Numbered from the stretch's first letter, positions 751 to 63,652 are shown. The stretch: 64,000 bases of DNA from Mytilus californianus (GCF_021869535.1 NW_026262667.1:6324001-6388000), one strand, 5' to 3'. Translations and numbers: made by a program. The notes: generated by a model from the letters alone, not told the origin.

Positions 751-807
751 ATATTAATTAAACTGTAATGTATTTATTTATGTGTGAGTGTGTCTGTGTA
801 AGTTTAC

Positions 808-2939: not shown

Positions 2940-2974
<35 letters not shown>

Positions 2975-24500: not shown

Positions 24501-27500
24501 ATTTGGAAGTAAGAAAACCTCTCAACACAGTTAGATGGCGATAACTTGACAGCATACATTGTAACCAAAGGTCAGAGAATTTTTTTCACAGGTTTTTGAT
24601 CATATTTGATGATTTCAAATTCAATATTCTTTTATTCAAACTGTAAATTTCATATACAGCAGAAGTCGAGAAAGCAAATTCCTCAAGAATTGATAATGCT
24701 ACTTTCGATTTTGAAATTAGAAATATGCAGTGGAAATTTTAAGTTGATTATGAATGATGAATGAAAGATTACATTAAATGACAGTAAATAAACATATGTT
24801 TAAAATTCATTCTTGTAACAATATAAAATAAGGAGATGTGGTATGATAATATTATGATTGCCAAAATATTATTATTGTAAAAGTGTTTCATTTATTAGGA
24901 CTGATAAATGTTTTACTCTTGTAATTTTTCATGGAATGGTTGCATATTTTACGATTAAAAATCTAACATCATAGGCATGCATTTCTTTTTTACAACAATA
25001 TTGAATAAAAAGTTATAATTCTAATATATAAATTATCGTTAGCCATATCAGTTAGTGCCTTAATATGTTCTTTTCCATCCCAACTAACATATCAGTAAGC
25101 AACTGCAAGAATATCTTAATCCACTAACAAAAATAAAATAAAAAATTTTGAAAACAAGTATTAACAGAAAAACAAAACTTTAGTTTGTATTGGCAAGCAG
25201 ATACATACCATAATTTGTGCTTGTGAAGTACCAGCATCAGGGATGGCATAGTATACCCTGGCTTCATGACTCCCATTAGTGGCAACATCCCTTCCTTCAT
25301 CAGTCAATTCCCATCTTTTATTAACTATCTGTTCTGCTTTTATTAACTGCAAATACAGGATTATGCAGTTTTATAGTATATGTAAAGCTATGCTGAGGAC
25401 AGAAAAATATTAGTTTACTACCATGTAGTGCTCTTGATCAGGACAACCATGTATTTTGTTACCTATTCTGACATCGGACTTCTTTTAAACTGAGTTTAAC
25501 TGTGTGTATTGCTGTGTGTTTGTTTATTCTACATTGACTAGAGGTATAGTGGAGGGTTGAGATATCACAAAACATGTTTAACCCCACTGCATTTTTGCGC
25601 CTGTCCCAAGTCAGGAGCCTCTGGCCTTTGTTAGTCTTGTATGTTTTTTAATTTTAGTTCATTTATATGTTTTGGAGTTTAGTATGACGTCCATTTTCAC
25701 TGAACTAGTACACATTTTTGGTTAGGATTAGCTGAAGCCCTCCTCTGGGTGCGGGATTTTCTCGCTGTGTTGAAGACCCATTGGTGGCCTTCGGCTGTTT
25801 TCTGCTCTTCGGTCAGGTTGTTGTCCCTTTGACACATTCCCCATTTCCATTCTCAATTGTATGTTCCCAATCATAAATTGAAAACTGCCAAGTTCAACTC
25901 TTTTACTCACTATCTTTTTTAGTTATTGAACTGACACACACTAACATACTGTCTCTTTGAAAAAGAGAATGATAGCAAATTGTAGAAATATCTGTTGTTT
26001 CAAATTGGCTCCTTTTTGATAGAATTATTGCCAGAGTGGAAAATTGATCAGGTTATGATATTGGGATATTGCAAAACATTGTTCTTAAATGTTGAAATGA
26101 GTTTTTCATGATTTTAATATTCCCAGTTGGATATATCATGTATATATTTACCTTTAAGAGCTATTCCAGAAAAAGGGGTTGGAAGGCATTTTATATTAAT
26201 AATACATGGGTGATGGGTATCAGAGCAACTTTTCACACTACAATGCACTATGATTCTCAATTACAATTGTCTGGGTGGCAGGTGCTGAAACAAACTGCCT
26301 TCCAACCCCCCATACATTTTTCTCTGGAACAGCTTTAGAAAAGTGGCCATCAACCAAAGGAAATAGGACAACTTGTACAACCGTCTATAATGAAAACTCA
26401 GATATAGTATTTAAAGAGGGTTTGGACTTTTTAAATGTCAGAGTGTAATGATTAAATGTTATATTTCACATAAAAGTAATAAATTAATGTGTTTTAACTT
26501 TAGTACTTTTAAAATTATTTCTATATTGTATGTCTTAGATTTTACTTACAGTGCTCAAATCATTATGTAAATGCAAAGACACTCATTTAATCATTTATGG
26601 TTAAAACAGGTATCAAAACTCTCCCTTTATACTTTGAGTTGGCACTATATGACTTATTTATGGTCAAACTTCTCACAGTTCCGAGTTGTCTTTTTTGTCA
26701 TAGACACTCTGACATTAAATCAAAATTTTGGTCAAAAGTCTCCTTCAACAGCTTGAGGACAACCTGCCAAATGGGAAACTCTTCCCCATTATGGTAAAAC
26801 TTCTCACAATTCCGAGTTGTCTTTTTTGTCATATATAAAGACACTCAGACATTAAATCAAATTTTTGGTAAAAAGTCTCCTTCAACAGAATGGGGGCAAC
26901 CCGCCAAATGGTAAACTATTTCCCAAATGAGTATCAATCCCTCATTTGAGCAATCATTTGATAGTGCCAAGGCCAAAAAAAAATATATGTCTGTTTACGG
27001 TTACCTGACCGACCCTATTTTTGAGCGCCGACCCTATGTTATTTTATTTCCATTCTAAAGTGAAACTTGTGTCAAAAGCGAAGTTAGTGTTGCAAATAAT
27101 ATAAATCAATTGCCTGATACATCCCAATGTTCACAATCGTGAATATGACAGCTGTTTTAAGGAAATTCGCGACTCGTGTGAAGAAATTAACACTCTGCCG
27201 CCATTTTTTTCCAACCAATTACCAAGGGAATTATCCAATCATTAAAATTACAGGTAAACTCGGCCCTTGATCAACTTGGACCACGACAAGACGAAACCGC
27301 ATGACTCAAAATCATTTCACAAAAAATAAAATGAAAAAATAGAATAAAATGGAAATACCGACCTACATTGTACCTACCCTATTTTTTAAAAGTATGTAAC
27401 CTTAAACAGACATATATTTTTTTTTGGCCTAAAAAGGAAATTTTCTTAACTGGGTGCTTTTACTTAAAATGGCACACATTTATAGAAAATGGAACAACTT

Positions 27501-28278
27501 CTTCCAAAGAAACATAATTTTATTTTGGGTTTTTAAAAAGTTAGTCGCCTTGAAAATAGTCAATTTCTAGAAGTTTTCTGAAGCTTACAACTTCTCAGTA
27601 AATCAGGTTGGGGCTATTTGTCTTTTGGAAAATTTGCTGCATTCTTTATAAATACATGCCATTTTAAATAAAAAAGACTCAGTTAAGAAAATTTTGTTTT
27701 TAGCACTATTAAATGATTTCTCATATATTGGATTGTTATACTCATATGGTGAATAGTTCAATACCCAACCTGTTTTAATATTTTGTTTGAATTGGCATAA
27801 CAGGCATTCCCAGTTGATTAATTGACGGACCAAGTTAATTTCATAGATTGTCTGAGTGGTCTTCGGAGCCCAAGTTGTCTTGCACCCCAACCTAATGATG
27901 CATGCTTGCAAGAGAAACAGCATATACATGATATAGCAATCTACAATTCTGGTTAGAAAATTGAAGCATACAACCTTACATGCAGTTGGATCCCTTAAAA
28001 TATAAGGAAATATACACATTTATAATAACAGAATAATGATTCATTTATTGCATCATCTGTCTGATCTGATATGCCTTCCTATATTTTCGCTTACAGCACT
28101 ATAATTTATTGGTTTCGAATTAAGGTATCACCTCTCCAAAGGACTGAAGACTCTTTATGGCCCCAACAATTTTTTGGTGGTCTTCTTTCAACTCGGTTGC
28201 TAGCTCAAGAGAATTTATATGCCCCTTTTTATCAACATGCTGCAAAACTACTTCAAGTTCAGCCATGTTCTCGCTCAT
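12568..28278 (-). CDS. FARSA: Phenylalanine--tRNA ligase alpha subunit, paralog A (complete, 12 exons, 501 aa)
   Basis: Exons (minus): 28132-28278, 25209-25346, 24209-24310, 23693-23811, 22934-23026, 19843-19971, 19106-19221, 18277-18367, 17933-18032, 15370-15616, 13250-13364, 12568-12676 (sum 1506 nt = 501 aa + TAA). Motifs: [105 protein letters not shown]. An alternative start ATG is at 28266. Confidence 0.95.
13811..15293 (+). mobile_element. HINE-like family B with internal ~130-bp tandem array (FARSA-A intron 10)
   Basis: Starts AACAAGAGTGCACAC. Repeated units AACCATGAAAATGAGGTCAAGGTCAGA...CCATACACCAAATATAGTTGACCTATTGC. Ends with hairpin TGTCGAGC...GCTCGACAAAAA. A remnant of the same family lies on the minus strand at about 61785-61977. 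Confidence 0.7.
14345..14622 (+). mobile_element. Single-unit family A element nested in family B
   Basis: Both termini and one core unit are present, inserted in an A-run of a family B unit (AAAAC|AAAACTTAAC). Confidence 0.75.
16155..17518. mobile_element. Deleted hAT-like DNA transposon
   Basis: TIRs CAGTGTTCTCCC / GGGAGAACACTG. A decayed minus-strand segment near 16390-16480 reads [28 protein letters not shown], resembling a hAT transposase C-terminus. No clear TSD. Confidence 0.55.
18444..18593. mobile_element. 150-bp MITE with 11-bp TIRs and 6-bp TSD
   Basis: CAGTCTGCACC...GGTGCAGACTG with CACTAC duplicated on both sides (18438-18443, 18594-18599). Internal inverted ACTAGTCCG/CGGACTAGT. 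Confidence 0.75.
19017..19050 (-). pseudogene. Degenerate partial duplicate of FARSA-A exon 7
   Basis: Minus strand reads [11 protein letters not shown] at the same offset (about 55 bp) from the exon 7 donor as in paralog B. Confidence 0.65.
20591..21991. mobile_element. Degenerate TIR element (hAT-like ends) hosting a SINE
   Basis: Imperfect TIRs CAGTGTGCCAGC / GCTGAAACACTC with subterminal GTGCCC motifs at both ends. Confidence 0.35.
20834..21093 (-). mobile_element. Full-length tRNA-derived SINE with TSD
   Basis: Minus strand has A box TGGCCGAGTGG, B box GAGTTCGAACCC, central GGTTTTCTCCGGGCGCTCCGACTTCCTCCACC and an (ATCAA)n tail. 14-bp TSD CCA[T/C]TTCTGTTGAT at 20820-20833 and 21094-21107. 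Confidence 0.85.
22670..22883 (+). mobile_element. Short deleted family A element
   Basis: Termini GAATGTGTCC and TAATGCCCCCTCCGC with a truncated core. Confidence 0.65.
25455..25860 (+). mobile_element. Interspersed repeat, probable retroelement 3' UTR
   Basis: GC-richer block ending GTTGTCCCTTTGACACATTCCCCATTTCCATTCTCAATT. It shares AGTCAGGAGCCT with the related block at 30810-31090. Confidence 0.45.
26659..26925. repeat. Tandem duplication, 2 copies of about 130 bp
   Basis: ATGGT(C/A)AAACTTCTCACA..TTCCGAGTTGTCTTTTTTGTCATA...AAAAGTCTCCTTCAACAG occurs twice in FARSA-A intron 1. Confidence 0.8.
26971..27429. mobile_element. MITE with ~28-bp TIRs (PIF/Harbinger-like ends)
   Basis: GGCCAAAAAAAAAATATATGTCTGTTTA ... 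TAAACAGACATATATTTTTTTTTGGCC, followed by TAA. Confidence 0.75.
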
Positions 28279-28508
28279 GCGTTTCTGCGGTCCTGTAAAA
28301 GTGGTGTCTTCAAAAGATTTTTTCTGCAAAATAAGAAATTAAATGTATTTTTTTGCGAATTGTTTGAATCACATCAATATACAGGTGGTTGTGTTTACTA
28401 TATATTATGTACAGAATATATTATTTTTGTTCCGCGACAATTTTTCAGAAGTTCAAGGTCAGATAGCTTTATCCTCTTACGAAACTTTAAAGAATTATTA
28501 TAGTGGAA
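28279..28508. promoter_or_regulatory. Putative bidirectional promoter shared by FARSA-A and GCDH
   Basis: Divergent start codons are only 230 bp apart. The promoter role is inferred from geometry, not mapped. Confidence 0.6.
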
Positions 28509-39924
<11,416 letters not shown>

Positions 39925-46444: not shown

Positions 46445-47345
46445 CTAGACGAGAGGCGAAAAAGATCAAAGGGACATTCAAACTCATAAGTCGAAAATAA
46501 ACTGACAACGCCATGGCTAAAAAAGAAAAAGACAAACAGACAAACAACAGTACACAAAACACAACATAGAAAACTTAAGACTGAGCACTGAGCAATACGA
46601 ACCCAACCAAAAACTTGGTGATTTCAGGTGCTCCGGAAGTGTAAACAGATCCTGCTCCACATGTGGCATCCGTTGTGTTGCTCATGTTAGTACAAACCCG
46701 GTGATAAGTCTAATTCGGTAGGTCACATTCGGGTAAAAGGGGACGGGATTGTAATTACGACAATTGGAACATATCCGCTATCATATGTGAAACAGATATT
46801 CCATAAAGGTCAACCAATTCGTGATGGCTCCGTAAAATTAACGAAGGGATTTCAACTTCACCACTTGGAACTCTTGTTTTAAAAGCTTCCTCCTTGCAAG
46901 CAGCAATCCTCTATCAAGGAAATCATGATAGGAAATACAAGCCCTGGAATATCCTTTCAACTGGGAGATATACACTCCGTATGCAAGCGCTGCTGGAATG
47001 TTGCTACATAGAAATGGAAAGTTCACAATTGGGAAGCTGAAATCATCTCTTTTGTCGTAAAGTTTTGTTTTAAACCGACCCTCATTGTCAATTTCTAGAT
47101 GTCAGACTTAACTGTAGCTGTTGTATCCTTCATCTCAAGTTCGAGGGGATAGATGCGTTCAACATGTCACCAAATTTCAAATCATTTAGTGAGAGAACAT
47201 CATTTATATAAACGGAAAGTGAAGTAAAAGGATATTGCTAACTTCTTTCCTTTCTTCCTAAGAAGTTCATGTATGAAGTCAGCCTCATTAATAAAGGAAC
47301 AAGTCTGCAAGAAGAGGAGCACAGTTGGTTCCCATGGGAATCGCT
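46445..47345 (-). mobile_element. Penelope-like retroelement remnant (RT C-terminus and 3' region)
   Basis: Minus strand encodes ..NFPFLCSNIPAALAYGVYISQL.. and PMGTNCAP-like sequence. Closely similar to 54596-55860. Confidence 0.8.
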
Positions 47346-47689: not shown

Positions 47690-50600
47690 ATTAGTGATCT
47701 ATTCCAGCGGCGGCTCATCCCTACCACTTATTACATAGTAAGTGGTCCCCGAAGGTCAGGAGTACTAAACAACTCGTCTAACTACTACACAGTGGCACAA
47801 AACCAAATCCAAGTCATAGACAACCAAGATGTCCATGCGCAATTTACCAGAAATCATGCAAATTGGAATCTATAGCCTGATTTATTGGAATGTCCAGAAT
47901 TCAGCAATTAAGGGAAATGTGAACACACTTGATCTTGCTCATCTTGTTCCAAACCAAACAATTCTTCGACAAAAATATACTTCATACCAAATGGTAATTA
48001 CAGTAATCATTCAATTATTAAATATTTCAACCAATCCGTTATTTGGCTGAGAGTATATCCGAAGCAATCAAGACCAAGCACAAATTCCCCATCATTTAAC
48101 CGTTCATCATTCAGTGCTGAGACCAATCATGACACCATCCCAAAACCAACAAAAACCAAGCCAGTACCAAAGAAACAGTTGAGAATATTAAACATCAATT
48201 TCCAAGAAAGTTTCAACTGAACTAGATGTAACCATAGGGACAGAACCATTGTTAAATTCAAACATCAAATTAAGCCAGATAATCCCTGATTAACTAAACT
48301 ATGATATTATCTGTATCTATATCTGATACCGAACGCAGAGATCGCACGAAAGATCCTCATGGAGGAGGAGTTATGGTAGCTGCAAAAATTCATAACAGCA
48401 AGGGAACATCACAAAAACTAAAAAACAGAATTAATAACTGGAACAATAAATCTAGAAAAAGAAAATGCTTGTAGGTACCTTCTATCGACCACAGATAAAA
48501 CAGTCGACAGCTATCTGCACCAAAAGAAGACCACAATTAATACTATTCGAATGAAACATCAGAAAGATATTTTCTTAACTGGAGGCGACTTCAACATACC
48601 AGATATTAACTGGTCAGAACAAACCATCACAAGTTGACACTATCCTTCCAGGACCAACTAAACTTTCTTGGAGATTGTAGCTGACAATGGATTTAAACAA
48701 ATTGTAGACGTCACAACACGTTTTACAAAATTAAATGCATGACTATATCAACCACCTGAACGAATGGAAAACAACTGTCATGTTCCTGACTTGGTACGAA
48801 GTTAAACCTGGTTTTGTAATTAGCTAAATATCCCACTTGTATGAATAGTCAAAAGTTCCGTTATTTTGACAAAATTGGATGAGAAACCCAAACAGACATA
48901 ATTGGTTAACGTGACAACAACAATTGGGATGCAGCAGCTAAAACTGTGAAAACATACATCACATACATACAACAAAACTAAACAAACATACAAATAAATC
49001 TGACAAAGACTGTTTTTGTAGTTGATAGTACACACAGTATAGTTAAACATAATGACAACTACACTTTCCCGATAGGGTACAACTTAAGTAAAACAATATA
49101 AATGCAAAGGTATACAAAATGGAAAAAAACCCACGATTAAACTTCAAGCGTCCGAATTGCACCTCTGGACCCACCAGCATCAGGAACACCCAAAGCCCAA
49201 AACCCGAAAGCTGGTTACACAAATACCGAGCCACGTCGAGTTATACGACCAAAAGGAATATAATAGAACAAAGATAAAATAATCACCAAAGGAGTCCACA
49301 AAGTACATAAAAGCTACTGGACCAGGTTCAATTTTATCTCTCATACTAGCGACATACCAACTCGCTCCTATTCTCAAAAATCTGTACAACCATCACCCAA
49401 CACCGGAGAAGTCCCACAAGATTAGAGAGATGTTAATGCAGTACCCCTATTCAAGAAAGAGGAAAGACATTTAGGTTCCAATTAAAAACCTGTATCGATT
49501 ACCTCCTGATGTGGAATCTCAATAAGTACGATATGATTGCAATATACATTTTTAAAATCGTCGTGATATATAGCTATGAAATCTATAAATTAACGTCATA
49601 CAATAAAGCGTTATGGCTACAACGTTACCATAGTTAAATGTTAGTACTTCGCGTATTTTCCGACATTCTGGGGGCAGACAAAATTGAAATATGTAATCAT
49701 GAAAACTTAAATAAATGAAGTTCACACTTTAGATAAAAGAAATGTAAAAATAATGTCCACCTCAAATGAAATACTTTAGTCACTTAACCTTAACTGATCA
49801 CAATTAAAGTTTATCTCTTAGTCCATTCATGGATGTTTCTTCTGGCACACACGAAACAGTAATCGTCTTTGCATGTTACTTATTCCTGGCCTGTATCTAT
49901 GTGGCTACTTGACTCTACCAGTTGCTGGTTTGCTCTAACGGGTGGCCTTGATTCTAATTTGTGTCCTTGGAGCTTTTCATCAAGTGAATTTACGTGCGTT
50001 CTGCTTTGAACGAGGCATTGCGATATGTTCTCTGTCCTACTTATAGCAACGGCCATATTTGAAAGTAGATCTAGATGGTCATGTTTCCATGGTAACTTTG
50101 CCGTGTACTTTCCGTTCTTGTAGGCAATAGCTGTGTTCTGGTATGAAATGACGAACTGTAGATGATGAAGACTGGTTGATGTTTCTACTGATTGGTCATG
50201 ATAATAAATATCCGATCTTTGACTGAACAGCGGTGGGTCTTTTTCCTCTAATAACTTGGTCCTCGATAATTCCCCAGTAGTAGTCGGCGCCTATTAGTAA
50301 ATCAATTTCGAAACGTTCTATAGCTTGGCACAGAGTGTGCAAGTTTAAATCTTCTAAAGTGTGGCAAGCTCCTTATATTATGCGAAATCTTTTTCTGAAT
50401 CAGGACGGCAATCTGTGGAACAATGAGCGTGTTGATACGGATCTTTTCTCCTGTGTAGGTATGTTGTATTGTTGCAGTGTCTAAGTTTTGAACATTCTGT
50501 GATAAATTTCCAAACGCAGTCAGATGAATGCTGACTTTTCTTGTCGGTTTTATCTCCAATTTATCCGCTAAGTTTTGAGTTATGAACGAACGTTGTGCTC

Positions 50601-52560
50601 CCTCGTCAAACAAGATGTTAGATTCTATTCCTTGGTCGATATAACTAACTGGTGCAATGGATGTTTCAAGAAGAATGTCGCGACTTGTTGTGAAGAATGC
50701 ATTACACTAGTCTCGTCTGTTGTTTCAACTACGGTTATCGCTGACTGTTAGTAAATCATTGTAGGCTGCTGTGTCGTACCTGGAATGACCTCTTTTCCTT
50801 TACATATGCTGGTATGATACATTCCGTTACATGTTTTGCATCGTTTTATAAAATTACATGCGGTCACTCAATGTGACCCTAAACAGTTGAAGCATAACTG
50901 TTTCTGTTTGACAATTTGACTTCGCTTGTTTACGTCTGTTACTTCAGTGCACTTTGTCTGAAAGTGCTCACCTGAACAAAAATACATGTACGTGTATTAA
51001 GCTTCTTACGTGATTCTGAGAATTTGGCCTTGATGTATGAATATGATTTCGTACCCATGAAAAATGCAATGGTGTGCAATCCGTCTGATTCCGTGACCCC
51101 TTGTCCTGCTTCGAGTAAGTCGATATCTATAGTTATCGATTTGCGTAAATTTTCTAAGAACAAATTATGTCTCCCTTGTTCTCGCGCAATAGATTTCCTT
51201 ATTTCAATTGGTAATTTGTCCAAAACAACTGGGACCAAAAGCGATCCATACATATCTGGTGTTTGACCAAGTGATTAGAAGCCTCGCACATAGGATTCTA
51301 GTTCGTCTCCGTAAAACCTCAATCTCTATGCATCATTTGTTGGTGGGGGTAGGTTCATGAGTGCTTTCATGCAAGTATGTATCAGTTTACTTGATTGTCC
51401 GTAACGATCTCAAAGAAGGTTGACTGCGGTTTCGTAATTTGCATTGGTCCAAGCGAATCCCTCTACTGTTTGTGCGGCGCTTTCCGCAGGCTGGGCTTTT
51501 AGATTATTGGTCTTTTGGATTGGCGTTAAAGTATTATTATGATGAATAAATGACTCGAAACAATCCAAAAATGTTTGCTACTTGAGTATATCTCCATTAA
51601 AATAGGGCAAGTCTAACTTAGGTAGCCTGTAGTAATTACTTTTTGACGATTTCGACCCTAACGGGACTTGATACATACTATTCTCTGACGATCGGGTATG
51701 TACTGCAGGGGCGTCAATTGAATACTGCTTGTTCAAAGAATCTGTTGCACAAGTGTTCATATCAACTCTGACCTCGGGCGTGAAATTATATGCATTTACG
51801 TTAAGTCTGCTTGTTGAAGGATCAACATTACATACATCATGTGACGTTCTAGTGTTTGTTTAATTTTGCCATTTGATAAGGGACTTTCCGTTTTGAATTT
51901 TCCTTGGAGTTCGGTGTTTTCGTTATTTTACTTTTTTCTAAAGACTTGGTAAATTTGCGAATTTGTCTAAGCTTGCAATCTAGTTCATACATATACTCAT
52001 CTGAGTTGGTGATTTCCTGTTCCGGATTTTCTTCCGATTTTTGATCCAAAAGTCTGCTATTTAAGTCAATCAATGTTTTCTGTTTCTGCGTGACGGCATC
52101 ATCGAGAACTTTCACTTCGTCAACTTCTGTATTTGTGTTAGACTTTAACTCGTAGAATGTTAACAGTAACTTCTTACGGCTCCTTTGTGTCCAGCACAAA
52201 CTGACTTCAGCATTGAATCCATATCCTGTTCACGGCACCATTAAATGTTGTGGAATCTCAATAAATACGTTATAATTGCAATATACGTTTAATCGTCGTG
52301 ATATATAGTAATGGAATCTATACAATAACGTCATACAATACAGCGTTATGGCTACAACGTTATCATAGTTCAATGTTAGTACTTCGCGTTTTTTCCGTCA
52401 CCCCATCATATGCAAGGCAAAAAAGATCACATTGATAGAACAAGTGCAAAAAGAAGCAGTGAGATTTGTCGAAAACAACTGCAAAGACCGAAAACCTGGC
52501 TTTGTAACAAACATGATAAATCAAATAATAAAGGAAATCCTCGGAGAACGAAGGAAAACC
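47690..52560 (+). mobile_element. Fragmented CR1/L2-like LINE (APE endonuclease and RT start), interrupted by later insertions
   Basis: Decayed motifs PHGGGVMVAAK, VGTFYRP, GGDFNIPDINWS (48350-48620), then ..NAVPLFKK..PVSITS (49440-49506) continuing as IICK after the LTR element (52405 onward). Confidence 0.6.
49507..52400 (-). mobile_element. Internally deleted BEL/Pao LTR retrotransposon with two ~155-bp LTRs
   Basis: Direct repeats 49507-49665 and 52246-52400 (TG..CA). PBS TGGTGCCGTGA (52230-52240, minus), complementary to the tRNA-His 3' end. Frameshifted gag RLPKLDLPYFNGD, YGSLLVPVVLDKLP, protease FDEGAQRSFIT, and LLIGADYYW. Confidence 0.85.
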
Positions 52561-53529: not shown

Positions 53530-56500
53530 ATGTTGCCAACTTTGGTAATTTTGATTTCGTGCTTTTTATTTGTACATGCATCGTGGTGGCGCCCACATCA
53601 GCACATGGCCTGGAACGATGTGATAAATGAACATCACATCAACACTGGTGTTCATGGAGACATGTTTGTCGTCGATTTGTTTGATGTGCCTACAAGTATC
53701 ATTGATGATCTCCACAGGTTTGTCATATTGTTGCGAGCAAAATCTTTATTTTTGTTGAAAAAAGCCTATTGGAAAATTTGGTCGGTGGGGTTTCTGCTTG
53801 TCTTTGCATGAGTTACCTAGAAATTAAAAAGACGCTGCAAAATAATGCTAAAAAAGCATAACATATCTGCCGCAAATTATACAAACACTATGCAATTTCC
53901 AGTTATAATGAATTTGATACCGCACTTTATTTTTAAATTTTATTGCCTGTTTGCATTATTGATTCACTGTTACTTGGTCGATAACACTGTTGATTAACTA
54001 TATTTTTTTATGGCTTCTAAACAGTCAATAACGTTGTCACTATTTGTTGTAAACATTCATTCTCAGATGCAATTCATAAACTGTGTTATAGATGCTCCAA
54101 TTATCTCAGACAATTTGACGTTAACAGTTTTTGCTAACTTATTTATACCGTACATGATTTTTGTCTCAAAGCTTTCTTTGTAATATGTTTCCTCCAAATT
54201 CAGGAAAGGGAAAAGGGTAATATGTTACTTTTCTGCTGGAACGAAAGAAGATTGGCGAAATGATGCCGGCAAGTTTCCATCCGATGGACTTGGGGTTCCT
54301 AATAAGGACTGGAAAGGCGAGACATGGGTTGACATAAGAAATAGTCAGTATGTATACATAATGTTTAGTCCAAATGGCGTCTGTCGTCGTCTGGTGTCTG
54401 TCGTAAACTTATTCGATGATCTCTGAAACTACGGAATCAATTTTAACCAAACTTGGCCTGAATGATCCCTAGGCCATCTAGTATAAAGTTCATGTTTTTT
54501 TTATTCAAGCCAATCCACCAACATGGCAACCATGGATCAAAATAGAACTGATATCTTGAAAACTATAGATAAAAGAGAAAATCTGAAATGATAAGATGAT
54601 CAAACTCATAAGTCGAAAATAAACTGACAACGCCATGGCTAAAAAAGAAAAAGACCAACAGACAAACAATAGTACACAAAACACAACATAGAAAACTAAA
54701 GACTGAGCAACACGAACCCTTACACAAACTTGATGATCTCAGGTGCTCCGGAAGGGTAAGCAGATCCTGCTACACATGTGGCACCCGTCGTGATGCTCAT
54801 GTTAGTACAAACCCGTTAATAAGTCTAATTCGGTAGGTCACATTTGGGGAAAAGGGGACGGAATTGTAGTTACGACATTTTGAACATATCCGCTATCATC
54901 TGTGAAACGGATATTCCATAAAGGTCAACTATTTTGTGATGGCGTCCGTAAAATTTACGAAGGGATGATTCAACTTCTCCACTTGGAACTCTTGGTCTAG
55001 TAGCTTCCTTGTGAGCAGCAACCCTCTATCAATGAAATCATGATAGGAAATTCAAGCCCTGTAATATCGTATCAACTGGGAGATATATACTCCGTTTGCA
55101 GGCGCTGCTGGAATGTTGCTACATAGAAATGGAAAGTTCACAATTAGAAAACTGAAATCATCTCTTTTGTCGTAAAGTTTTGTTTTCAACCGACCCTCAT
55201 TGTCAATTTCTAGATGTGAGTCAAGATATGAGGCAGACTTAACTGTATCTGTTGTATCCTTAATCTCAAGTTCGATGGGATAGATGTGTTCAACATAGTC
55301 ACCAAATTTTGAATTATTTAGTGGGAGAACATCATCAATATAGCGGAAAGTAAAGTTAAAGGATACTGCTAACTTCTTTTCTTTCTTCCTAAGAAGTTCT
55401 TGTATGAAGTCAGCCTCATATAAATTAAGGGACAAGTCGACAAGAAGGGGGCACATTTGGTTCCCATGGGGTTGCCGATTGTTTGTTGAAAAACACGTCC
55501 TCCAAACGTAACAAATATGTTGTCAATCAAGAAATCAAGTATCTTGATAATAGATATAGGAAGATGTGGTATGAGTGCCAATGAGACAACTCTCCATCCA
55601 AGTTACAATTTATAAAAGTAAACCATTATAGGTCAAGGTAAGGCCTTGATAATGTCCGTTTCAGAGAATTTTTTGTTTGAATCAGAGAGATTTTTTACAA
55701 AGTAGGATTTATCCCTCCCTAAGACAAGATGCTTGTATCTAAGTTGGCCATTCTTTTTGATGAATCAAAGCAGGACCAACTCTTTCAATTTGTCTTTTAG
55801 TTTGGAATGGGGGAGATCAACAAATAAGATATGTTGATCATGAATGATATGCTAGTCTTATAATGTCGGGCAATTGTTGAAGATGCACATATATCCAGGC
55901 GAGCGACACAGGCTCTGTAGAGCATCTTGTTGTTATTCATACGAAAAAACAAATTTTCTTGTTTTATTCAAGTGAGTCAAAACAAAATCTTTAAAATTAT
56001 TATTTGCTGCTTCTCCGCCGAAACTGATCGGCTATGGAGATATATCTTCTCTGGCCATTAACTGGTAGACTAGCCCGTTATATGTAACAGGCTGGTACAT
56101 AGCAGGGTACATTCATATTGCATTAACATGTCATTTTCATATGCATGAAATACTTTGCGCTGATAGTCAACCATCCACTTATCAACTAATCAATCAAAAT
56201 TACTAAAACAGTACAATTTATCATATCACTACGTTGTTTTGTAGAGTTAGACGTATAATGAGGGATCGGATTGCTCATGCAAAATCTCGCCATTGTGATG
56301 GTGTAGATCCGGATAATGTTGATGGATGGGCACAGAATCAAGCAGGACTCCATTTAACATCAGATAATCAATTGGACTATAACAGATATTTAGCGAGAGG
56401 TAAAACATTTATATATGAAGGACAACTACCGACGTTCCTCACTTTTTATCCTCGTCTAAACTTTGCAATCATGTTTCAACATACAAGTGAAATATTCATA

Positions 56501-59500
56501 TGTTACACTTAATCATTTTCCGCTCAATATTTTAAAATCTTAATTGTCTTCTCCAAGAACAATTAAATGATAAATATCAACTGCTGATATCATAATAAAG
56601 AGGTAGTGATCAAATAAATCCAATTTCATATGAACGAAGGCGTTTCAAACGGATAATCTTTATTTCAACATCTAACCTTTGTAAACCACCTTCACACAAC
56701 ATATGATACTTAATTCGTGCACACACGACGTGTTTCTGGATTGACCTTCATAAAGTACGCTAGAGACCAACAGTTGGAAACCATAGAAATATAAAACGTT
56801 TGAGAGCATTCAACCCGGTTTGGAGGTAGACCTGGACAGTGAAGGAAAGTCTCAAGTATACCTATGTAATAGCTGACTTTCAGGCTTCATATAAAACTCG
56901 AGCCGATTTGCTAGGGTTCAGGGTAACGTTAAACATCCTCTAGTAACAATGATAAAATCATAAATTTGGTATTACATATAAAAACTATAACATACTATCA
57001 TCACATTTAATGGTAATATACAAAACATTGCTCTTCAAAAATACGATTAAATTGTGAACATAATAAGTGCAAATGAGATTTTGCTTTACATAATACTTAG
57101 TTTTTTCAACCTATTTTAGAAAAATACATTATAATTCTAATAGCATATTACTAATCCTCACCAACTTGTGGAGAAAGGTAGTTACTGCTATGACACAAAC
57201 CATTTCAAAAGTATATTATATACTGGTATATCACACAGTGAACTTATAATATATAACAGCTTACAAATTCTGTAATCCAAAATTACAAGGTTTAATTAAT
57301 GATTTTAATGTTACCATATTGAAACATAGACATAGTTATAAAACATGCAATGTAAGCGATGTTTTCATGTAAGGAAATCATACATAAATCAGGCAATACT
57401 TTAAATATGTACAGAACTATCGTTCTCTTTCTAATACAACTTTATTTATGTTTTTCTATTTGTAATCAATCAATACTGTTATCGTGTACGGACTGATGCA
57501 CTCAATTAATACACTGTAGTATTCAAAATTTACTTATAACAAAGTGTTATCGAATACACCTCATAATATCGATCGGAATGTGTGTACTTTCTAAACTGAT
57601 TTACATATAGTTCTACCGAGTGACTTCCATTTTATTTATGCAACACACGATGTATATATATATATTTGCAAAATATGTCGCAATAATACATTTCTGAAAA
57701 AATAGAGAAAAATAATCATTCATTCAATAAATCATTCACTCAATGAAAATATATTAGGCATATTAATAAAGAAGAAATTAAGAAAAACTCACGTCAAAAT
57801 GTCAAGTCTGTCAATCTATTCAATATAAATTCTCAATAATTTCTATGGCTTCTGGACATAAACATCTATCTATTTCAAATCCATTAGTCTTTCTGTTTCA
57901 AACAAAATAAGTCACAAATCAGCGCTAAAACCTCAAACCAACAAATCAGATTACCAGAAATCCAAATAATCATGAATATTTAACAATACGTCAATAATGT
58001 ATGGAAACGTTTGAATGTAATCAAAATTTAGAAAAAATATAATATTTTGAAGTTTTATTTAACATTTACATAATTATGCATCTTTATTTTACCATTTGAA
58101 TATACACTAAATAAAAAGACTATCACCTTCTCTAACGTGTTGGAAAAATGACTTTCACGCCATTCGACTCTTCCTCCTTCTGATGAAGATATGACGTCAA
58201 AGCATTCAAAACAGGTATTCACTATGCTGTTTCTTTCACAATTTCAATTATAGTACGTGTGATATCTCTCTCCATTCTTCTAAACCTTCCTTCCTTCAGT
58301 TGTTTCTTTAACCATTCTACTTTATGTAGCTAAGATGTTTGTCCAATACCTTGGTTGTAACTATAACTCTGTTGTTGGTTATTCTCATGGTAGTGTATAT
58401 ATGTAGTATTCCTCGTCCTCTGAGCCTTGTTGGTTACTGCAGTGTGTTATCTGGAGCCACTGGTTCCTTTGTGTTTGCCTCGGTATCACCTGATGTGTCT
58501 GAGAGCGTACTACCATCCTGATCATTCTGTTTGTCAGAAGTATCCCCTCTTATCAATCTAGTCAGTCGCTTCTTAGCCTGTTGTCGCATTAGTCACAAGT
58601 GCTAGTTCACCAGTGTTCAACTGTGCTAGAGGGAAAGAGTCATGTCCAAAATCATTCTCTTGACTACCACCAACTGTAGTCCGATCGTTACCAGCTTAAT
58701 TGACGCTATCTTGTTGCCAACCTACCACAGGTACAGCATCACTGTTGGTGTTGCTTTGTGCGTCTTCCTCTGGCAACCAAATAATGAAGCCCTGCTCTGG
58801 CTCTTTATCAGATTATGTCTCGTACTATAGGATTTTGTCTTCTGTTTCTCAAGGACTGTCTCAATATGTTGCGTCCTTGGTGTAGGGTTTCTTTTAGGCC
58901 GTTGTGATAACTGAACATTATCACTTTATGATCTGTAAACAGATACATTGATGCTAACATGTGGAAATGTATTTAAGTGCGAAATTGTTATTTAGATAAA
59001 GTCCGAAACCGTAAGATTTGAGTAATGTTGTCTTGTCTGCACGTGTTTTCAATAGTAAGATAAGGGTCATGGGAAAGTTCACTTAAAGCTGCATGCATTG
59101 ATTCATTATTATTTTGAAGTTCGACCGTTTAGGATTAATAAATTATAGCTTAGGAACTTTGTGTTTTTCTATGGGTGTATAGTTAAGATACCACATATTT
59201 TGTCGACGAGGATAAACTATTATATTAATTAAAACATTTACAATGGCTGATGATCCACCAGTAGCAGTTGTTATGCCTTCAAATACGACAGAATAGAAGA
59301 ATTTGATGAACATTCTGAAGACTGGATTCAGTACACAGAAAGATTAGAATTCTATTTTACAACAAATAACATAGACAATGCCGAGAAAAAACGAGCAATA
59401 TTACTAAGCGCTTGTGGGAAGAAAACCTATAAACTGATGAGAAATTTATTTGCACCAGGGAAACCAGGAGAAAAAACATTTGATGAACTGGTAAAATTAG

Positions 59501-62500
59501 TAAGAGATCACCAAAATCCTAAGCCATCAGAAACTGTACAGAGGTATAAATTTAATACTAGAGATAGAAATCAAAACGAAACGACTAGTTCGTATGTAGC
59601 CGAATTGAGGAATATTTCGGAACATTGTAATTTTAATATGACATTAGAGAACATATTAAGAGATAAACTTGTGTGTGGCAAAGAAGACGACCGAATACAG
59701 AGGCGACCTTTAGCTGAACCAAAATTGAAATTTCCAAAAGCAATGGAAATAGCGCAGCGATGGAGACAGCTGCGAAAAATGCACAAGATTTGCAAACTAC
59801 GGAATCACGTCAGACCGTGCATAAGATGACATTCAGACAAGAGGAATGTTACCGTTGTGGTGGAAACCATAGACCACATGAATGCAAATGGAAAGACGCC
59901 AAGTGCTACATATGTGAAAAAAGGGACACTTAGCAAAAAGGTGCAGGAATAAAGGGAGGCAACACCCAGCTAACGTGAAACCAAGGAATAAGCAACAGAC
60001 GCAGTCAGGACATCCGAAATCTAAACAGAAGCAACAGAAAACACATTTTGTAGAGGAGGATAATAGTGAATGCAAGGAAAAATATTCTATGTATCAAGTG
60101 CAAACGGAAAAGAGGAAACCTTATTGCATTAAGGCTCAAGTCAACAATATGGAGATCGAACTGGAATGTAGCCTTTTCCAAACCGGGCATACGTCCAATT
60201 GGTCGAATGATATTTCTGTACAGAGTTTTTTTTCGTCCTTTTCCATATCTTGCAGTTTTGCCATCAAATTCTATCTCTCTAAACAAAAGCCATGAATAAT
60301 CTTAAATATAGAATGATAAATGAATTAAGAAAAATTCAAAATTGTTTGTGATTTAGTATAAATCTTCTTCTAAAACTGTTCAACTTTCAATTATAATATA
60401 AATGTAAATATAAATGAAACACTCAGAAACGTGTCCTTCCCCTCAAACGTGTCCAACCCCCCAAACGTCTTCATATAACGCATAGACATGTATAGCTTGT
60501 GTAAGACACCGAAACGTGTCCTTTTAATAAACGTCCATATTTTGAAAACGTCCAAATGGGCCTACCTATATGAAAAGTTATTCGTTATCACATATGTTGT
60601 TTGAAAACAAATTAAGTCGAAAAAAACAAATTAAATCGAAATTTGAACAGGAACGTTATACCCGGTGAACAAGAAAAAAATATTTCATGTATATTAAGGA
60701 CGAGAACAAATTAACAATTAATACAATTTAGTTGGTTCTTATAACTTGGAGCGGACACGCTTGGGGGAGATGGACACGTTTCGGCGAATCGGACACGTTT
60801 GGGGGATGGACATTTATGAAAGTGTAACATATATGACAGCCTGAAAAAGATTTTTATTTAACAATTTTTGATTAACATTAACCGCACCTTAAGCCGGTCT
60901 TTTCTTCTTATTTCATAAGGTCTCATTGAGCCGCTAAATGTATGTAATATCTTACTTTGAATTTTAGTTGTAAAAGAAGTTGAATATAGATATTTCACAA
61001 CCATTATCAATTTTTTATCCAACCAAAGAAGAATAAACTTTTTTTAATGGATGGCTGGTTGCGCCTCGTCTGGTTCCTGAAAGTTATATCATACAATTTA
61101 TAACTTTTATGCAAATATTTTGTAAATTTTGAATATATTTGTGCAAAGTTAAGTTCCTAATAAAAATTAATCCTAGAAATTTTATTTCTTAAAAACTATT
61201 TTCAATATATGACTGCCAAATTTCAAAGTTGTATAAATTTTTCCTTCTAGTAAATATCTTTAGCTACAGTTTTTACTTGGAGAATTTTTTAAACCCCCAT
61301 TATTACATAACATTTATGTTTCATTAGAATCTGTAATTTTTGGCGGACAACAATTGCGAGGAACTCCCATATCAAATTTTATTTTCGTAAGAAATACAAT
61401 ATCTATGAATAGCTTGATATAACTCTTAATTTCATGTTTGTAGCATAAAAATATAATTCTAAGAACTGAATGCTTGTTTTTATAATATTGTATGGCGTTA
61501 ATGCGTTGAACGTGAGCACATTTTTAATAAATGTGCTTCGGTCAACGCTTTTACACCCCAATAAAATTATAAAAAGAAGCATTTAATTTCTTAATTGAAG
61601 AGCACCATTTACATATAATATCTAGTCTTGTTATATAAAAACTTAATCACGACGGCTCATTCAATTTGCTGATGGCTGCTTTGTCAACAACATCAACTCC
61701 AACTAGCAACGCGGATATTCTTTATTGACTTTGAGACGGCTACCCGTTATTCTGCCCAACGAACATTTGCCAACATTAAGTGTACATGCTTGTCTGACAG
61801 GGTTCATCTGACCTTGACCTCATGTAAATGGATCATTGATGGTGATGAAGTTTATGTGATATTTGTAGTAAAAACTTCATATTACAGTTATATTACAGTC
61901 ATATTACAGTCTTTCAACACAAATTAATTCATGATAAATAAAACAGGCAGTACATTTCAGCGTGTGCACTCTTGTTTATCAATTAAACTTTTTTGTGCTT
62001 AATTCAAAGATTATTTTTTGTATACTATTAATGTGTCCACAAGTTAAAACATTTTCTTGCGCATAATTTCAGGATTTTATAGTGTTTTGTCCATAAGGGC
62101 TAATATTGTAAATAATTTCATACGATTGTAAAATAGTTTGTTCGTTGTTTACCACTGTTTTGTATATTAGTGCTCTTTGGTGAAATAAATATGTTTTTTT
62201 CAATTTTGACTTTTTTTCAACTATCAATCCGGCAGATTATTCAAAAGTATATTTGAACTAGATTCACTGTAACTATAATAACAGCTAAATTTCACTAATC
62301 CTTATTGCCAAAAAAAAAATCACGTTTCTCAAACACGAAATTACTTACCTGTATACAAAATTATCAAATGTTGGAGAAAACTGAACACACCGATGATGAT
62401 TTTTTGGCAGAAAATGAGGGGACACATTACTTTGTAACACCTGTTTCATATCTTTATCGTGTTTTTCTTGACATTCTTTGATAAAATAAGAGATCACACA

Positions 62501-63652
62501 AAATGTGTGCTAAAGATCTTCGGTCCAAGAATTTTTTTCTTGTGTTATGCACTATATTTTACTACTAAGACCTTTGAAAATTACTTTACAGAGGCACACG
62601 GCTATGGTTTAGCTATCGGACTGAAGAACGATGTAAGCCAACTTGATGACCTGGTTGGCGACTTTGACTTTGCCATTAACGAATCCTGTATGGATTATGA
62701 TCACGAGTGTGACCGGTACAAACCATTTTTTGATGCTAGAAAGGTATACCGAAATAAGTTATATTAATTTTATAGTTGCCTTGTTGAGATAGACACCTTT
62801 ACAAATCATACCAATTACGGAAAATAAACTATATAATATGACAGTTTATATTATCACCGACCTGTAATGCTGATTTGATTCAGTAAGAATTGTTTATTAA
62901 ATACTCCCCCATTTACACTGAACGGTTTCTGACTGTTAAACCAAATTAATTTACAAGATCTACATTCAGGTTTTTAAAATATAATCATTAGGTGATGTCT
63001 GTCTACAGTCATCAAATTGACTTCCAATCCACCATTTGAGGTTGAGTAGAAATGGTTTCAAACCTATGATAAGACAACAACAATACAATTTGTATTCATA
63101 AACTAAAGATTTCAGTGTTCACTATTTACCACATGATGCAGTGTTGGTGTCTATATGAAATTCGTTATAATGCTTTCATTTACATCCATGTAGAATGTGT
63201 TCAAGAACTTAGACTGACACTCTCGTAATATCTAAAAAAAAACTTGCTTTGGGACTGCAATTGCCACATTCTCCTTTCTGTAAAGGTAGATGACCAAGAC
63301 TCAATTTCCAAAGAGGATGCCATCGTAAGTTTGTTTTAGGAAGTACGAATAAAAGATTTGGGGTTTAAGTCAACAATACACCAATCTAATCACATAATAA
63401 TCTACTGTCACATATTTTCTTGATTAGTTAGGAAATTTTGTATCATTTATTATGTTTTCATCTAAGTAGGCACCATTAGTCTTTCATACATTTGATTTTT
63501 TATAATTTTAGCCGGTGTTTCACATCCAATATGTTAGTTCTACGACAGAAGGTCATCAAAAGCAACACGAAATATGCTCATCGTCAAAACGACCTCATAA
63601 CATGAATACTTTAATTAAGCATGGGATGGTAAACTGGAAAATTGGTTGTTAA
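53530..63652 (+). CDS. Secreted glycoside hydrolase family 114-like protein (endo-alpha-1,4-polygalactosaminidase/Ega3-like), 5 exons, 259 aa
   Basis: Exons: 53530-53717, 54204-54347, 56245-56399, 62592-62743, 63512-63652 (780 nt, phases consistent, all GT-AG). Hydrophobic leader MLPTLVILISCFLFVHA, then WWRP, VVDLFD, KRVICYFSAGTKEDWRNDA, WKGETWVDIR, CDGVDPDNVDG, QLDYNRYLAREAHGYGLAIGLKND, FDFAINESC...ECD, PVFHIQY. These motifs match GH114 as I recall it; no search was run. Confidence 0.88.
54596..55860 (-). mobile_element. Penelope-like retroelement remnant in GH114 intron 2
   Basis: RVFQQTIGNPMGTKCAP..LYEADF..FTFRYIDDVL..SYLD..KTKLYDKRDDFSF..VNFPFLCSNIPAAP, a PLE RT with a YIDD motif. Frameshifted. 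Confidence 0.85.
59201..60180 (+). mobile_element. Ty3/Gypsy gag remnant in GH114 intron 3
   Basis: PBS-like TGTCGACGAGGAT (59201-59213), then EEFDEHSEDWIQYTERLEFYF..LLSACG..TFDELVKLV.DH.NPKPSETVQRYKFNTR..LRDKLVCG, and CYRCG / CYIC.K.GH zinc knuckles. Frameshifted; pol is absent. Confidence 0.85.
60427..60813. mobile_element. MITE-like element with inverted subterminal repeats
   Basis: Clustered AAACGTGTCC on the left and GGACACGTTT on the right. Exact ends are not resolved. Confidence 0.5.

What the first reader, a model, noticed from the sequence alone, without database searches (positions are those of the whole stretch)
53530..63652. Intron-containing, secreted GH114 (Ega3-like galactosaminidase) gene in an animal genome: candidate horizontally acquired anti-biofilm enzyme
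Seen: five exons spread over 10 kb splice in phase into an uninterrupted 259-aa ORF with a signal-peptide-like leader and the full GH114-type motif series. Both predicted catalytic acids are intact (D in DPDN and E in AINE, 59 residues apart; D189/E247 in Aspergillus fumigatus Ega3 are 58 apart). Established: characterised GH114 enzymes are bacterial or fungal and cleave alpha-1,4-galactosamine polymers such as fungal galactosaminogalactan and Pseudomonas Pel, disrupting biofilms. Inference: a filter-feeding bivalve may have acquired this gene from a microbe, added spliceosomal introns, and now secretes it to digest or defend against cationic biofilm polysaccharide. The ORF track shows only three exon fragments of it, so it is easy to miss.
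Basis: partly seen in the sequence, partly recalled or inferred. Interest (0 to 1): 0.88.

Follow-up and report, generated by a model that had tools for sequence, protein, structure and literature searches.

The report
Mussel GH114 galactosaminidase gene, anciently acquired
The region holds an intact five-exon mussel gene for a secreted enzyme of a family (GH114) otherwise known from bacteria, fungi and protists; it is not a recent bivalve acquisition but one copy of a gene family shared by chitons, snails and bivalves that most likely came from a bacterium before molluscs diversified.

Summary
Five exons (53530-53717, 54204-54347, 56245-56399, 62592-62743, 63512-63652, + strand) have canonical GT..AG introns and splice into a 259-aa ORF. 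Exons 2-4 each hit Pfam Glyco_hydro_114 above its cut-off. The best solved relative is Aspergillus Ega3, and its Trp154, Asp189 and Glu247 are conserved as W99, D134 and E193.

The window is Mytilus californianus; RefSeq LOC127726959 is a truncated 144-aa model of this gene. The M. coruscus orthologue keeps all exons and splice sites. Exon divergence is 1.7% against 5.8% for introns, and dN/dS is about 0.29, so the gene is under purifying selection.

The interpretation needs revising. The gene belongs to a Mollusca-wide family found in chiton, limpets, periwinkle, apple snail, oysters, pearl oyster, clam, unionid and mussels. Three of its four intron positions are shared by every class examined, and the fourth is bivalve-specific. 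The window gene is a fast-evolving pteriomorph "type A" paralogue of the ancestral "type B". Type B is 58-60% identical to Myxococcota/Proteobacteria enzymes.

Ancient bacterial-to-mollusc transfer is the best reading, with vertical descent and massive loss as the rival. The proteins are already in RefSeq and UniProt with an automatic GH114 label. I found no paper describing animal GH114. Activity and expression remain untested.

The parts
53530..53717 (+). Exon 1 (188 nt, ends in phase 2). Start ATG at 53530. Signal-peptide-like leader aa 1-17 (53530-53580), then the N-terminal barrel strand WWRPHQHMAWNDV...
   Evidence: One mismatch in 188 nt against the M. coruscus orthologue. The 5' flank is homologous to the 5'UTR of the mRNA-like contig L001.
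54204..54347 (+). Exon 2 (144 nt, phase 2). Carries the VICYFSAG strand and the beta3-insertion lid loop with W99 (54310-54312), which aligns with Ega3 Trp154.
   Evidence: Pfam E 1.4e-15; Ega3 alignment; codon check.
56245..56399 (+). Exon 3 (155 nt, phase 1). Carries CDGVDPDNVDG with the predicted nucleophile D134 (56312-56314), which aligns with Ega3 Asp189.
   Evidence: Pfam E 2.5e-15; Ega3 alignment. The second D is invariant in 57 of 58 non-mollusc homologues.
62592..62743 (+). Exon 4 (152 nt, phase 0). Carries GLKND and FAINESC with the predicted acid/base E193 (62681-62683), which aligns with Ega3 Glu247.
   Evidence: Pfam E 7.6e-14; Ega3 alignment. The Glu is invariant in 58 of 58 non-mollusc homologues.
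63512..63652 (+). Exon 5 (141 nt including the TAA stop). Carries PVFHIQY and the C-terminal Cys-containing tail. An ATTAAA poly(A)-like signal lies at 63695.
   Evidence: 100% identical to RefSeq LOC127726959 residues 99-144.
55052..55581 (-). Retroelement-derived ORF fragments inside intron 2, with a near copy at 46841-47101.
   Evidence: No Pfam hit; the repeat nature is inferred from the second copy.
59254..60292 (+). Degenerate gag-like ORFs with a CCHC knuckle inside the 6.2-kb intron 3. The deposited M. coruscus model wrongly splices exon 3 into the equivalent element.
   Evidence: P0001 carries PF03732 plus PF03537. No Pfam hit for the window copy itself.

Best explanation
Window 53530-63652 is an intact, selectively maintained five-exon nuclear gene of Mytilus californianus. 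RefSeq LOC127726959 is an N-terminally truncated model of it. The gene encodes a 259-aa secreted GH114 glycoside hydrolase, a (beta/alpha)8 barrel. By homology with Ega3 it should be a retaining endo-alpha-1,4-galactosaminidase. D134 would act as nucleophile and E193 as acid/base, with a Trp99 lid loop, and the enzyme would cut de-N-acetylated GalN stretches of cationic exopolysaccharides such as bacterial Pel or fungal galactosaminogalactan. It is one of several tandemly expanded, fast-evolving 'type A' paralogues restricted to mussels and oysters. These arose by duplication of a slowly evolving 'type B' gene present throughout Mollusca. That ancestral gene was most likely captured from a bacterium (closest: Myxococcota/Pseudomonadota enzymes) before crown molluscs diverged. 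It then gained three introns, with a fourth added in bivalves. Shown here: gene structure, family membership, catalytic residues, purifying selection, distribution in molluscs and shared introns. Inferred: secretion, substrate, physiological role (digestion of, or defence against, biofilm matrix), and the direction and donor of the transfer.
For: Gene and family:
- Splice model.
- Pfam GH114 hit on three separate exons.
- Ega3 is the best PDB hit by sequence.
- By fold, an AF2 model of the 85%-identical M. galloprovincialis protein P0156 (pLDDT 92.8) matches 6oj1 at E 1e-27, TM 0.85-0.87 and 38% identity. GH191 gives 12-17% and PelA 15%.
- W99, D134 and E193 are conserved.

Host genome:
- 100% identity to M. 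californianus LOC127726959.
- Two multi-exon PheRS-alpha genes lie upstream, and retroelements sit in the introns.
- The locus is colinear with M. coruscus.

Selection:
- All exons and splice sites are intact in M. coruscus.
- 13 of 780 exon differences against 177 of 3036 intron differences (Fisher p 1.6e-7); dN/dS 0.29.

Family history:
- Homologues occur in 3 mollusc classes.
- Introns 1, 3 and 4 are at identical alignment columns and phases in Mytilus, Ostrea, Crassostrea type B, Mactra, Sinanodonta, chiton, Patella and Pomacea.
- Intron 2 is bivalve-only, and at the same site in type A and in Crassostrea type B.
- Types A and B lie head-to-head in C. virginica beside GH56 and Ank-SOCS genes. 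The same neighbours flank the Ostrea gene.

Bacterial affinity:
- Type B is 58-60% identical to Myxococcota/Proteobacteria proteins.
- The type B clade (SH-aLRT 90.6) sits next to a bacterial clade.
- The nearest metagenomic relative of type A lies in a dense bacterial operon context.

Transcription in relatives:
- Intron-free mRNA-like contigs of about 0.9-1.2 kb exist (L001, P0292, P0420, P0425).
Against: - No transcript of this particular gene was found. RefSeq models only exons 3-5 (144 aa), so use of exons 1-2 rests on conservation, not RNA evidence.
- No enzyme assay exists for any animal GH114.
- The signal peptide was judged by rule of thumb only.
- In ML trees type A does not sit inside the mollusc type B clade but beside metagenomic bacterial sequences. 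Mollusc monophyly is only 'not rejected' (AU p 0.105-0.148) or weakly recovered (SH-aLRT 41).
- Fungal and holozoan GH114 were not in my trees, so vertical descent from an old eukaryotic gene is not excluded.
- Only the best 120 hits of each search carry names, so other animal phyla could be hidden lower down.
- Some paralogues have lost the nucleophile (M. gigas DPGN, mytilid mRNA DPEN) or both catalytic residues (LOC127727174). Not every family member is an enzyme.
Confidence: 0.72

Rival explanations
1. Vertical inheritance. GH114 is an old eukaryotic (for example opisthokont) gene kept in molluscs and lost in all other sampled animals. No horizontal transfer into animals occurred.
For: GH114 is patchily present in many eukaryotes: fungi (Ega3, FsGH114), oomycete, Plasmodiophora, Diplonema and a foraminifer transcriptome, and brown algae and chlorophytes (PMC11468063). 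Three introns are as old as crown Mollusca. Backbone support in my trees is weak.
Against: Mollusc type B proteins are 58-60% identical to Myxococcota/Proteobacteria enzymes, but the mussel model is only 38% identical to Ega3 and 28% to FsGH114. More than 150 cluster representatives, mostly bacterial or metagenomic, outscore Ega3 on exon 3. No named hit from any other animal phylum appeared in three searches. This scenario needs many independent losses.
Confidence: 0.15
2. Two independent transfers. The mussel/oyster type A genes and the Mollusca-wide type B genes were acquired separately from different bacteria.
For: The ML trees place type A (100/100 clade) apart from type B, next to a metagenomic bacterial group.
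Against: Type A shares all four intron positions and phases with bivalve type B, including the bivalve-specific intron 2. Types A and B are adjacent in C. virginica. The best non-A BLAST scores of the window protein are to mollusc type B (246-242 bits), above any bacterium (235). The AU test does not reject A as sister of pteriomorph B (p 0.105) or of all B (p 0.148). Type A has a long stem branch, so long-branch artefact is plausible.
Confidence: 0.07
3. The window copy is a decaying or non-enzymatic paralogue. Either it is expressed only as the truncated 144-aa product annotated by RefSeq, or not at all.
For: RefSeq LOC127726959 starts at Met116 in exon 3. No full-length transcript or protein of this gene is in the 15-billion-protein collection. 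A 6.2-kb intron 3 is filled with retroelement debris. Sister paralogues have lost catalytic residues.
Against: The ORF is uninterrupted and the splice sites are canonical. Exons 1-2 differ at only 2 of 332 nt from M. coruscus while the introns differ by 5-6%. dN/dS is 0.29 and the catalytic D134/E193 are intact. The truncated product would lack strands beta1-beta3 of the barrel.
Confidence: 0.08
4. Bacterial contamination or assembly artefact.
For: None beyond the microbial affinity of the protein.
Against: The gene has four spliceosomal introns carrying animal retroelements and a GC content of 31-37% like the rest of the window. PheRS-alpha genes are on the same contig. The orthologous locus is colinear, introns included, in an independent M. 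coruscus assembly. Synteny is conserved in two oyster genomes.
Confidence: 0.01

Closest known systems
Ega3 of Aspergillus fumigatus (CAZy GH114; PDB 6OJ1/6OJB), endo-alpha-1,4-galactosaminidase
   Same: Same Pfam family and the same (beta/alpha)8 fold. A model of the 85%-identical homologue aligns at TM 0.85-0.87, rmsd 2.3 A and 38% identity. The nucleophile Asp, acid/base Glu, lid-loop Trp and four aligned cysteines (VICYF, CDG, E-x-C, EC) are conserved.
   Different: Ega3 is described as membrane-bound (PMC12054363), whereas the mussel protein has a cleavable-looking signal peptide and no other hydrophobic segment. The host is an animal and the gene is split by four introns. Activity is untested.
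Bacterial GH114 endo-alpha-1,4-polygalactosaminidases (Pseudomonas sp. 881 enzyme; annotated homologues in Myxococcota, Cupriavidus and marine Gammaproteobacteria)
   Same: These are the closest sequences outside molluscs: 45-51% identity to the window protein and 58-60% to mollusc type B. They are single-domain secreted enzymes of similar length.
   Different: They are intronless genes in operon-like contexts, often fused to SH3_3, Ig-like or GH114_assoc modules. The mollusc genes are stand-alone catalytic domains.
GH191 (TmGH191, Env-GH191) and GH166 PelA hydrolase domain
   Same: Same barrel fold and the same Asp/Glu geometry. Both act on, or are linked to, cationic GalN/GalNAc exopolysaccharides (PMC12054363).
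   Different: Only 12-17% (GH191) and about 15% (PelA) identity, with far weaker Foldseek E-values (1e-11 to 3e-14 against 1e-27). The mussel protein is GH114 proper.
Other glycoside hydrolases and lysozymes horizontally acquired by bivalves or invertebrates (phage-type lysozyme in bivalves, PMC5303276; GH45 cellulases, PMC13084967)
   Same: A microbial-type secreted hydrolase, intronised and duplicated in a mollusc genome, with a patchy distribution among animals.
   Different: A different enzyme family and substrate. Here the distribution is phylum-wide, with introns shared across classes, which implies a much older event than the class-level lysozyme transfers.

Membership tests
CAZy GH114 / Pfam PF03537 | Significant match to the Glyco_hydro_114 profile over the whole catalytic domain | tested here: met
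   Exons 2, 3 and 4 score 57.6, 56.8 and 51.9 bits, each above the 27-bit cut-off. Exon 5 scores 13.3 bits. Together they cover profile positions 38-225 of 231 colinearly.
CAZy GH114 / Pfam PF03537 | Closer to GH114 proper than to the split-off GH191 or to GH166/GH135 | tested here: met
   PDB sequence hits rank Ega3 above FsGH114 and far above GH191. Foldseek gives Ega3 E 1e-27 at 38% identity, FsGH114 2e-18, GH191 3e-14 to 1e-10, and PelA 6e-11. The fold test was run on P0156, 85% identical, not on the window protein itself.
CAZy GH114 / Pfam PF03537 | [quoted passage not shown] | tested here: met
   AF2 model of P0156: pLDDT 92.8, pTM 0.89, alternating strand/helix pattern with extra strands 76-78, 92-95 and 102-105. 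The ESM Atlas model of paralogue P0157 has TM 0.89 to a fungal GH114 cluster.
CAZy GH114 / Pfam PF03537 | Catalytic Asp nucleophile and Glu acid/base (Ega3 Asp189/Glu247) | tested here: met
   D134 and E193 align with them. Both are invariant or nearly so in 58 non-mollusc homologues.
CAZy GH114 / Pfam PF03537 | Lid-loop tryptophan (Ega3 Trp154) | tested here: met
   W99 in KDW aligns with the DDW of Ega3 and is conserved in most mollusc copies.
CAZy GH114 / Pfam PF03537 | Endo-alpha-1,4-galactosaminidase activity on de-N-acetylated GalN polymers | not testable with these tools
   Needs recombinant enzyme and Pel, GAG or GalN-oligomer assays.
CAZy GH114 / Pfam PF03537 | Electronegative substrate cleft | not tested
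   Only bulk values were computed: mature protein pI 6.2, 35 D+E against 29 K+R. No surface electrostatics were calculated.
Horizontally acquired gene in an animal | Physically integrated in the host genome (introns, host neighbours, orthologous locus in relatives) | tested here: met
Horizontally acquired gene in an animal | Absent from other animal phyla and outgroups | tested here: inconclusive
   Three protein searches named only molluscs among animals. Only the best 120 hits are listed, most hits are unnamed, and no genome-level tblastn of other phyla was possible.
Horizontally acquired gene in an animal | Phylogenetic nesting within a donor clade | tested here: inconclusive
   Mollusc type B (SH-aLRT 90.6) is adjacent to a Myxococcota/Proteobacteria clade, and type A to metagenomic bacteria. 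The backbone is weak and no fungal or holozoan sequences were in the tree.
Horizontally acquired gene in an animal | Functional in the recipient (selection, expression) | tested here: met
   Purifying selection was shown. mRNA-like intronless contigs exist for relatives. Expression of this exact copy was not shown.

The most novel reading that the evidence does not exclude
A bacterial enzyme that degrades biofilm matrix (Pel/GAG-type polymers) was captured by the stem lineage of molluscs. It has been kept for more than half a billion years in biofilm grazers (chitons, limpets, periwinkles) and suspension feeders. In this reading it serves as a digestive or antifouling tool for dissolving cationic exopolysaccharide, so an HGT would have helped found the mat-grazing lifestyle of early molluscs. 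Mussels and oysters then duplicated the gene into fast-evolving type A copies, some of them catalytically dead and possibly lectin-like binders of GalN polymers used in immunity.
Probability: 0.2. Interest if true: 0.75.

Novelty: new member of a known kind. Interest (0 to 1): 0.5.

Why it matters
GH114 enzymes are of interest as anti-biofilm agents, since Ega3 disrupts Pel and GAG biofilms. They are described in the literature as bacterial, fungal and algal only (PMC12054363, PMC11468063).

A phylum-wide animal GH114 family, selectively maintained and duplicated, would matter in three ways:
- It would add a well-dated, ancient case to the short list of animal HGTs. Introns shared across mollusc classes place it before crown Mollusca.
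- It would suggest that molluscs enzymatically attack cationic biofilm polysaccharides. That is relevant to grazing ecology, gut and gill microbiome control and shellfish disease.
- It would supply eukaryote-expressed, disulfide-stabilised GH114 variants, including natural dead paralogues, for enzymology. Bacterial GH114 enzymes have resisted soluble expression (PMC12054363).

The work also corrects three deposited gene models.

Tried and rejected
- The spliced 259-aa protein could not be handed to the database tools by reference. All remote searches therefore used single exons or deposited homologues, and the structure was predicted for P0156 (85% identical), not for the window protein.
- The search of earlier findings near the locus returned nothing.
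- The treekit AU test of bivalve monophyly did not finish in two 300-s runs. Two plain IQ-TREE runs timed out.
- A '-fast' constrained search gave delta-lnL 139. I discard this as a failed search, because a single regraft of the same taxon costs only 12.9 lnL.
- The first trees lacked mollusc type B sequences and wrongly suggested that Sinanodonta was unrelated to the mussel/oyster clade. Adding type B and comparing introns resolved this.
- The chiton isoform P0324 is not on record for a locus look-up, so its paralogue P0407 was used instead.
- The AFDB cluster search hides organism names, so it gave no taxonomic information.
- Literature searches for GH114 or polygalactosaminidase combined with mollusc, bivalve, gastropod or HGT terms found no animal case. 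The HGT-in-Metazoa compendium text does not mention it; its supplements were not searched.
- Contamination and pseudogene readings were considered and rejected on the evidence listed under rivals.
Full report
**1. The observation**

On the + strand, five segments have canonical GT..AG borders: 53530-53717, 54204-54347, 56245-56399, 62592-62743 and 63512-63652. They join in phase (2, 2, 1, 0) into a 780-nt CDS of 259 codons ending in TAA. An exact-threading script recovers the same model.

Pfam Glyco_hydro_114 (PF03537) matches exons 2, 3 and 4 separately at E 1e-14 to 1e-15, each above the 27-bit gathering score. Exon 5 matches weakly. The matches run in colinear order along the profile.

The best solved relative of each exon is A. 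fumigatus Ega3, PDB 6oj1/6ojb. Trp154 and Glu247, named in PMC12054363, fix the chain numbering at index + 41.
- The verified nucleophile Asp189 then falls on the second Asp of the mussel DPDN motif (D134, codon 56312-56314).
- The acid/base Glu247 falls on the Glu of AINE (E193, codon 62681-62683).
- The lid Trp154 falls on W99.

The first 17 residues look like a signal peptide, and there is no other hydrophobic segment. The mature protein has six cysteines, four of which align with Ega3 cysteines.

**2. Whose genome, and is the gene alive?**

The product of exons 3-5 is 100% identical to RefSeq LOC127726959 of Mytilus californianus, a 144-aa model that starts at an internal Met in exon 3. 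The window is ordinary animal DNA.
- GC is 28-39%.
- Two tandem multi-exon phenylalanyl-tRNA synthetase alpha genes lie on the minus strand.
- There is retroelement debris, including inside introns 2 and 3.

The orthologous M. coruscus locus (L002) is colinear with 52.0-63.8 kb of the window at 87-96% nucleotide identity. It contains all five exons with identical splice-site flanks and an open 259-aa frame. The deposited M. coruscus protein CAC5377558.1 is a mis-model that runs from exon 3 into a gag-like element in intron 3.

Between the two species the exons differ at 13 of 780 sites (1.7%) and introns 1, 2 and 4 at 177 of 3036 aligned sites (5.8%; Fisher p 1.6e-7). Exons 1 and 2 have one change each. 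dN/dS is about 0.29 from 7 non-synonymous and 6 synonymous changes, so this is a rough value.

The gene is under purifying selection over its whole length. No transcript of this very copy was found. A 914-nt intron-free contig from a sequencing run (L001, 69% identical protein, with a 5'UTR homologous to the window upstream of the ATG) shows that a related mytilid gene is transcribed and spliced in this arrangement.

**3. The family**

A whole-library phmmer search with exon 3 and three word-indexed searches found the following.

"Type A" proteins:
- Mytilus californianus (three loci on one 12.5-Mb scaffold), M. coruscus, M. galloprovincialis, M. trossulus and M. edulis.
- Ostrea, Crassostrea, Magallana and Saccostrea.

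"Type B" proteins:
- M. edulis, C. virginica and Pinctada.
- The clam Mactra and the unionid Sinanodonta.
- The gastropods Lottia, Patella, Littorina, Gigantopelta and Pomacea.
- The chiton Liolophura (two genes).

No named hit came from another animal phylum. However, only the best 120 hits are listed per search and most are unnamed.

I threaded nine proteins onto their loci.
- Introns 1, 3 and 4 sit at the same alignment column and phase in every species, chiton and gastropods included.
- Intron 2 is present only in bivalves. It is at the same site in Mytilus type A, Ostrea type A and Crassostrea type B, and 9 nt upstream in Mactra and Sinanodonta.
- Pomacea has an additional 13-nt exon and its own intron near the intron-2 site; both may be annotation artefacts.
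- The Sinanodonta deposit skips exon 2, which is present at L005:33197-33328.

In C. virginica, types A and B lie head-to-head, flanked by GH56 hyaluronidase, Ank-SOCS and aquaporin genes. GH56 and Ank also flank the Ostrea gene.

Gene structure and synteny therefore indicate one ancestral mollusc gene, a bivalve intron gain, and a pteriomorph duplication giving type A.

**4. Phylogeny and origin**

Type A is a 100/100 clade on a long stem. Type B molluscs of all classes form a clade (SH-aLRT 90.6) next to a Myxococcota/Proteobacteria-rich clade.

In ML trees type A lands beside a metagenomic bacterial group instead of inside type B. However, regrafting it as sister of pteriomorph type B, or of all type B, is not rejected (AU p 0.105 and 0.148). 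The window protein's best scores outside type A are to mollusc type B. I read the tree position as a long-branch effect.

Type B proteins are 58-60% identical to bacterial enzymes. The mussel model is only 38% identical to Ega3 and 28% to the Fusarium GH114. The nearest metagenomic relative sits in a dense, intronless bacterial gene array.

This favours an ancient bacterium-to-mollusc transfer. GH114 also occurs patchily in fungi, oomycetes, Plasmodiophora, Diplonema, brown and green algae (PMC11468063), and my trees lacked fungi and holozoans. Vertical descent with massive loss therefore remains a live rival, at roughly 15%.

**5. Mechanism**

An AlphaFold2 model of the 85%-identical P0156 is a confident (beta/alpha)8 barrel (pLDDT 92.8). 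Its best solved match is Ega3 (E 1e-27, TM 0.85-0.87), followed by FsGH114, then GH191, then PelA.

By homology the enzyme should be a retaining endo-alpha-1,4-galactosaminidase acting on de-N-acetylated GalN stretches, as in Pel and galactosaminogalactan. Substrate, secretion and role are inferred, not shown.

Not all paralogues can be enzymes:
- LOC127727174 and its M. coruscus orthologue carry Thr and Val at the two catalytic positions.
- A M. gigas protein has Gly at the nucleophile position.
- The L001 product has Glu there.

**6. Novelty**

The proteins are already public, as RefSeq "uncharacterized protein" entries and with UniProt's automatic GH114 domain names. No paper in the searchable library links GH114 or polygalactosaminidase with any animal. 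Recent papers list the family as bacterial, fungal and algal.

The finding is a new host lineage for a known enzyme family and a new, old HGT candidate. It is not a new kind of system.

The same genome has other first-stage notes of candidate acquired glycosidases, which I did not test.

Noticed in passing
window 761-6307 (-) and 15323-28338 (-): Two tandem copies of the phenylalanyl-tRNA synthetase alpha-subunit gene. Each has a PheRS_DBD1 exon (6029-6307; 28123-28338) and class-II core exons (761-955; 19020-19241 and 15323-15661). The first copy runs off the window start. A duplicated aaRS gene is unusual; whether both copies are intact was not checked.
   Followed up: partly
L003 region / proteins P0155 and P0004: A type A paralogue conserved between M. 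californianus (LOC127727174) and M. coruscus has Thr for the nucleophile Asp (VVPTN) and Val for the acid/base Glu (AINV). It is a candidate catalytically dead, possibly carbohydrate-binding, pseudoenzyme. A M. gigas protein (P0167) has DPGN and the mytilid mRNA product P0160 has DPEN.
   Followed up: partly
L002:9926-24125 (M. coruscus), window 56258-63652, L005:10001-40860 (Sinanodonta): Three deposited gene models of this family are wrong. CAC5377558.1 fuses exons 1-3 to a gag element in intron 3. RefSeq LOC127726959 lacks exons 1-2. KAL3860194.1 skips exon 2 (present at L005:33197-33328).
   Followed up: yes
L007:1936-15777 and L004:10001-24781: In oysters the GH114 gene or genes sit next to a GH56 hyaluronidase-like gene and an ankyrin/SOCS-box gene. 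In C. virginica the type A and type B GH114 genes are divergently oriented neighbours.
   Followed up: partly
window 49883-52229 (-): Retroelement remnant with an aspartyl-protease-like ORF (50305-50706; Pfam Asp_protease_2/DUF1758, E about 1e-4) and neighbouring long ORFs without Pfam hits.
   Followed up: partly
window 38296-39040: Minisatellite-like repeat read as GKTIML units, with long ORFs on both strands. It has no Pfam match and is probably non-coding.
   Followed up: no
window 112-261, 8314-8490, 9410-9742, 14326-14589, 22724-22897 (-): Recurrent short ORF fragments ([14 protein letters not shown]..., [13 protein letters not shown]...) indicate an interspersed repeat family scattered through the PheRS introns.
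   Followed up: no
L006:6848-9131: The closest metagenomic relative of type A lies in a bacterial scaffold with two tandem GH114 genes, one fused to SH3_3. They are near a polysaccharide deacetylase and a GH77 gene.
   Followed up: no
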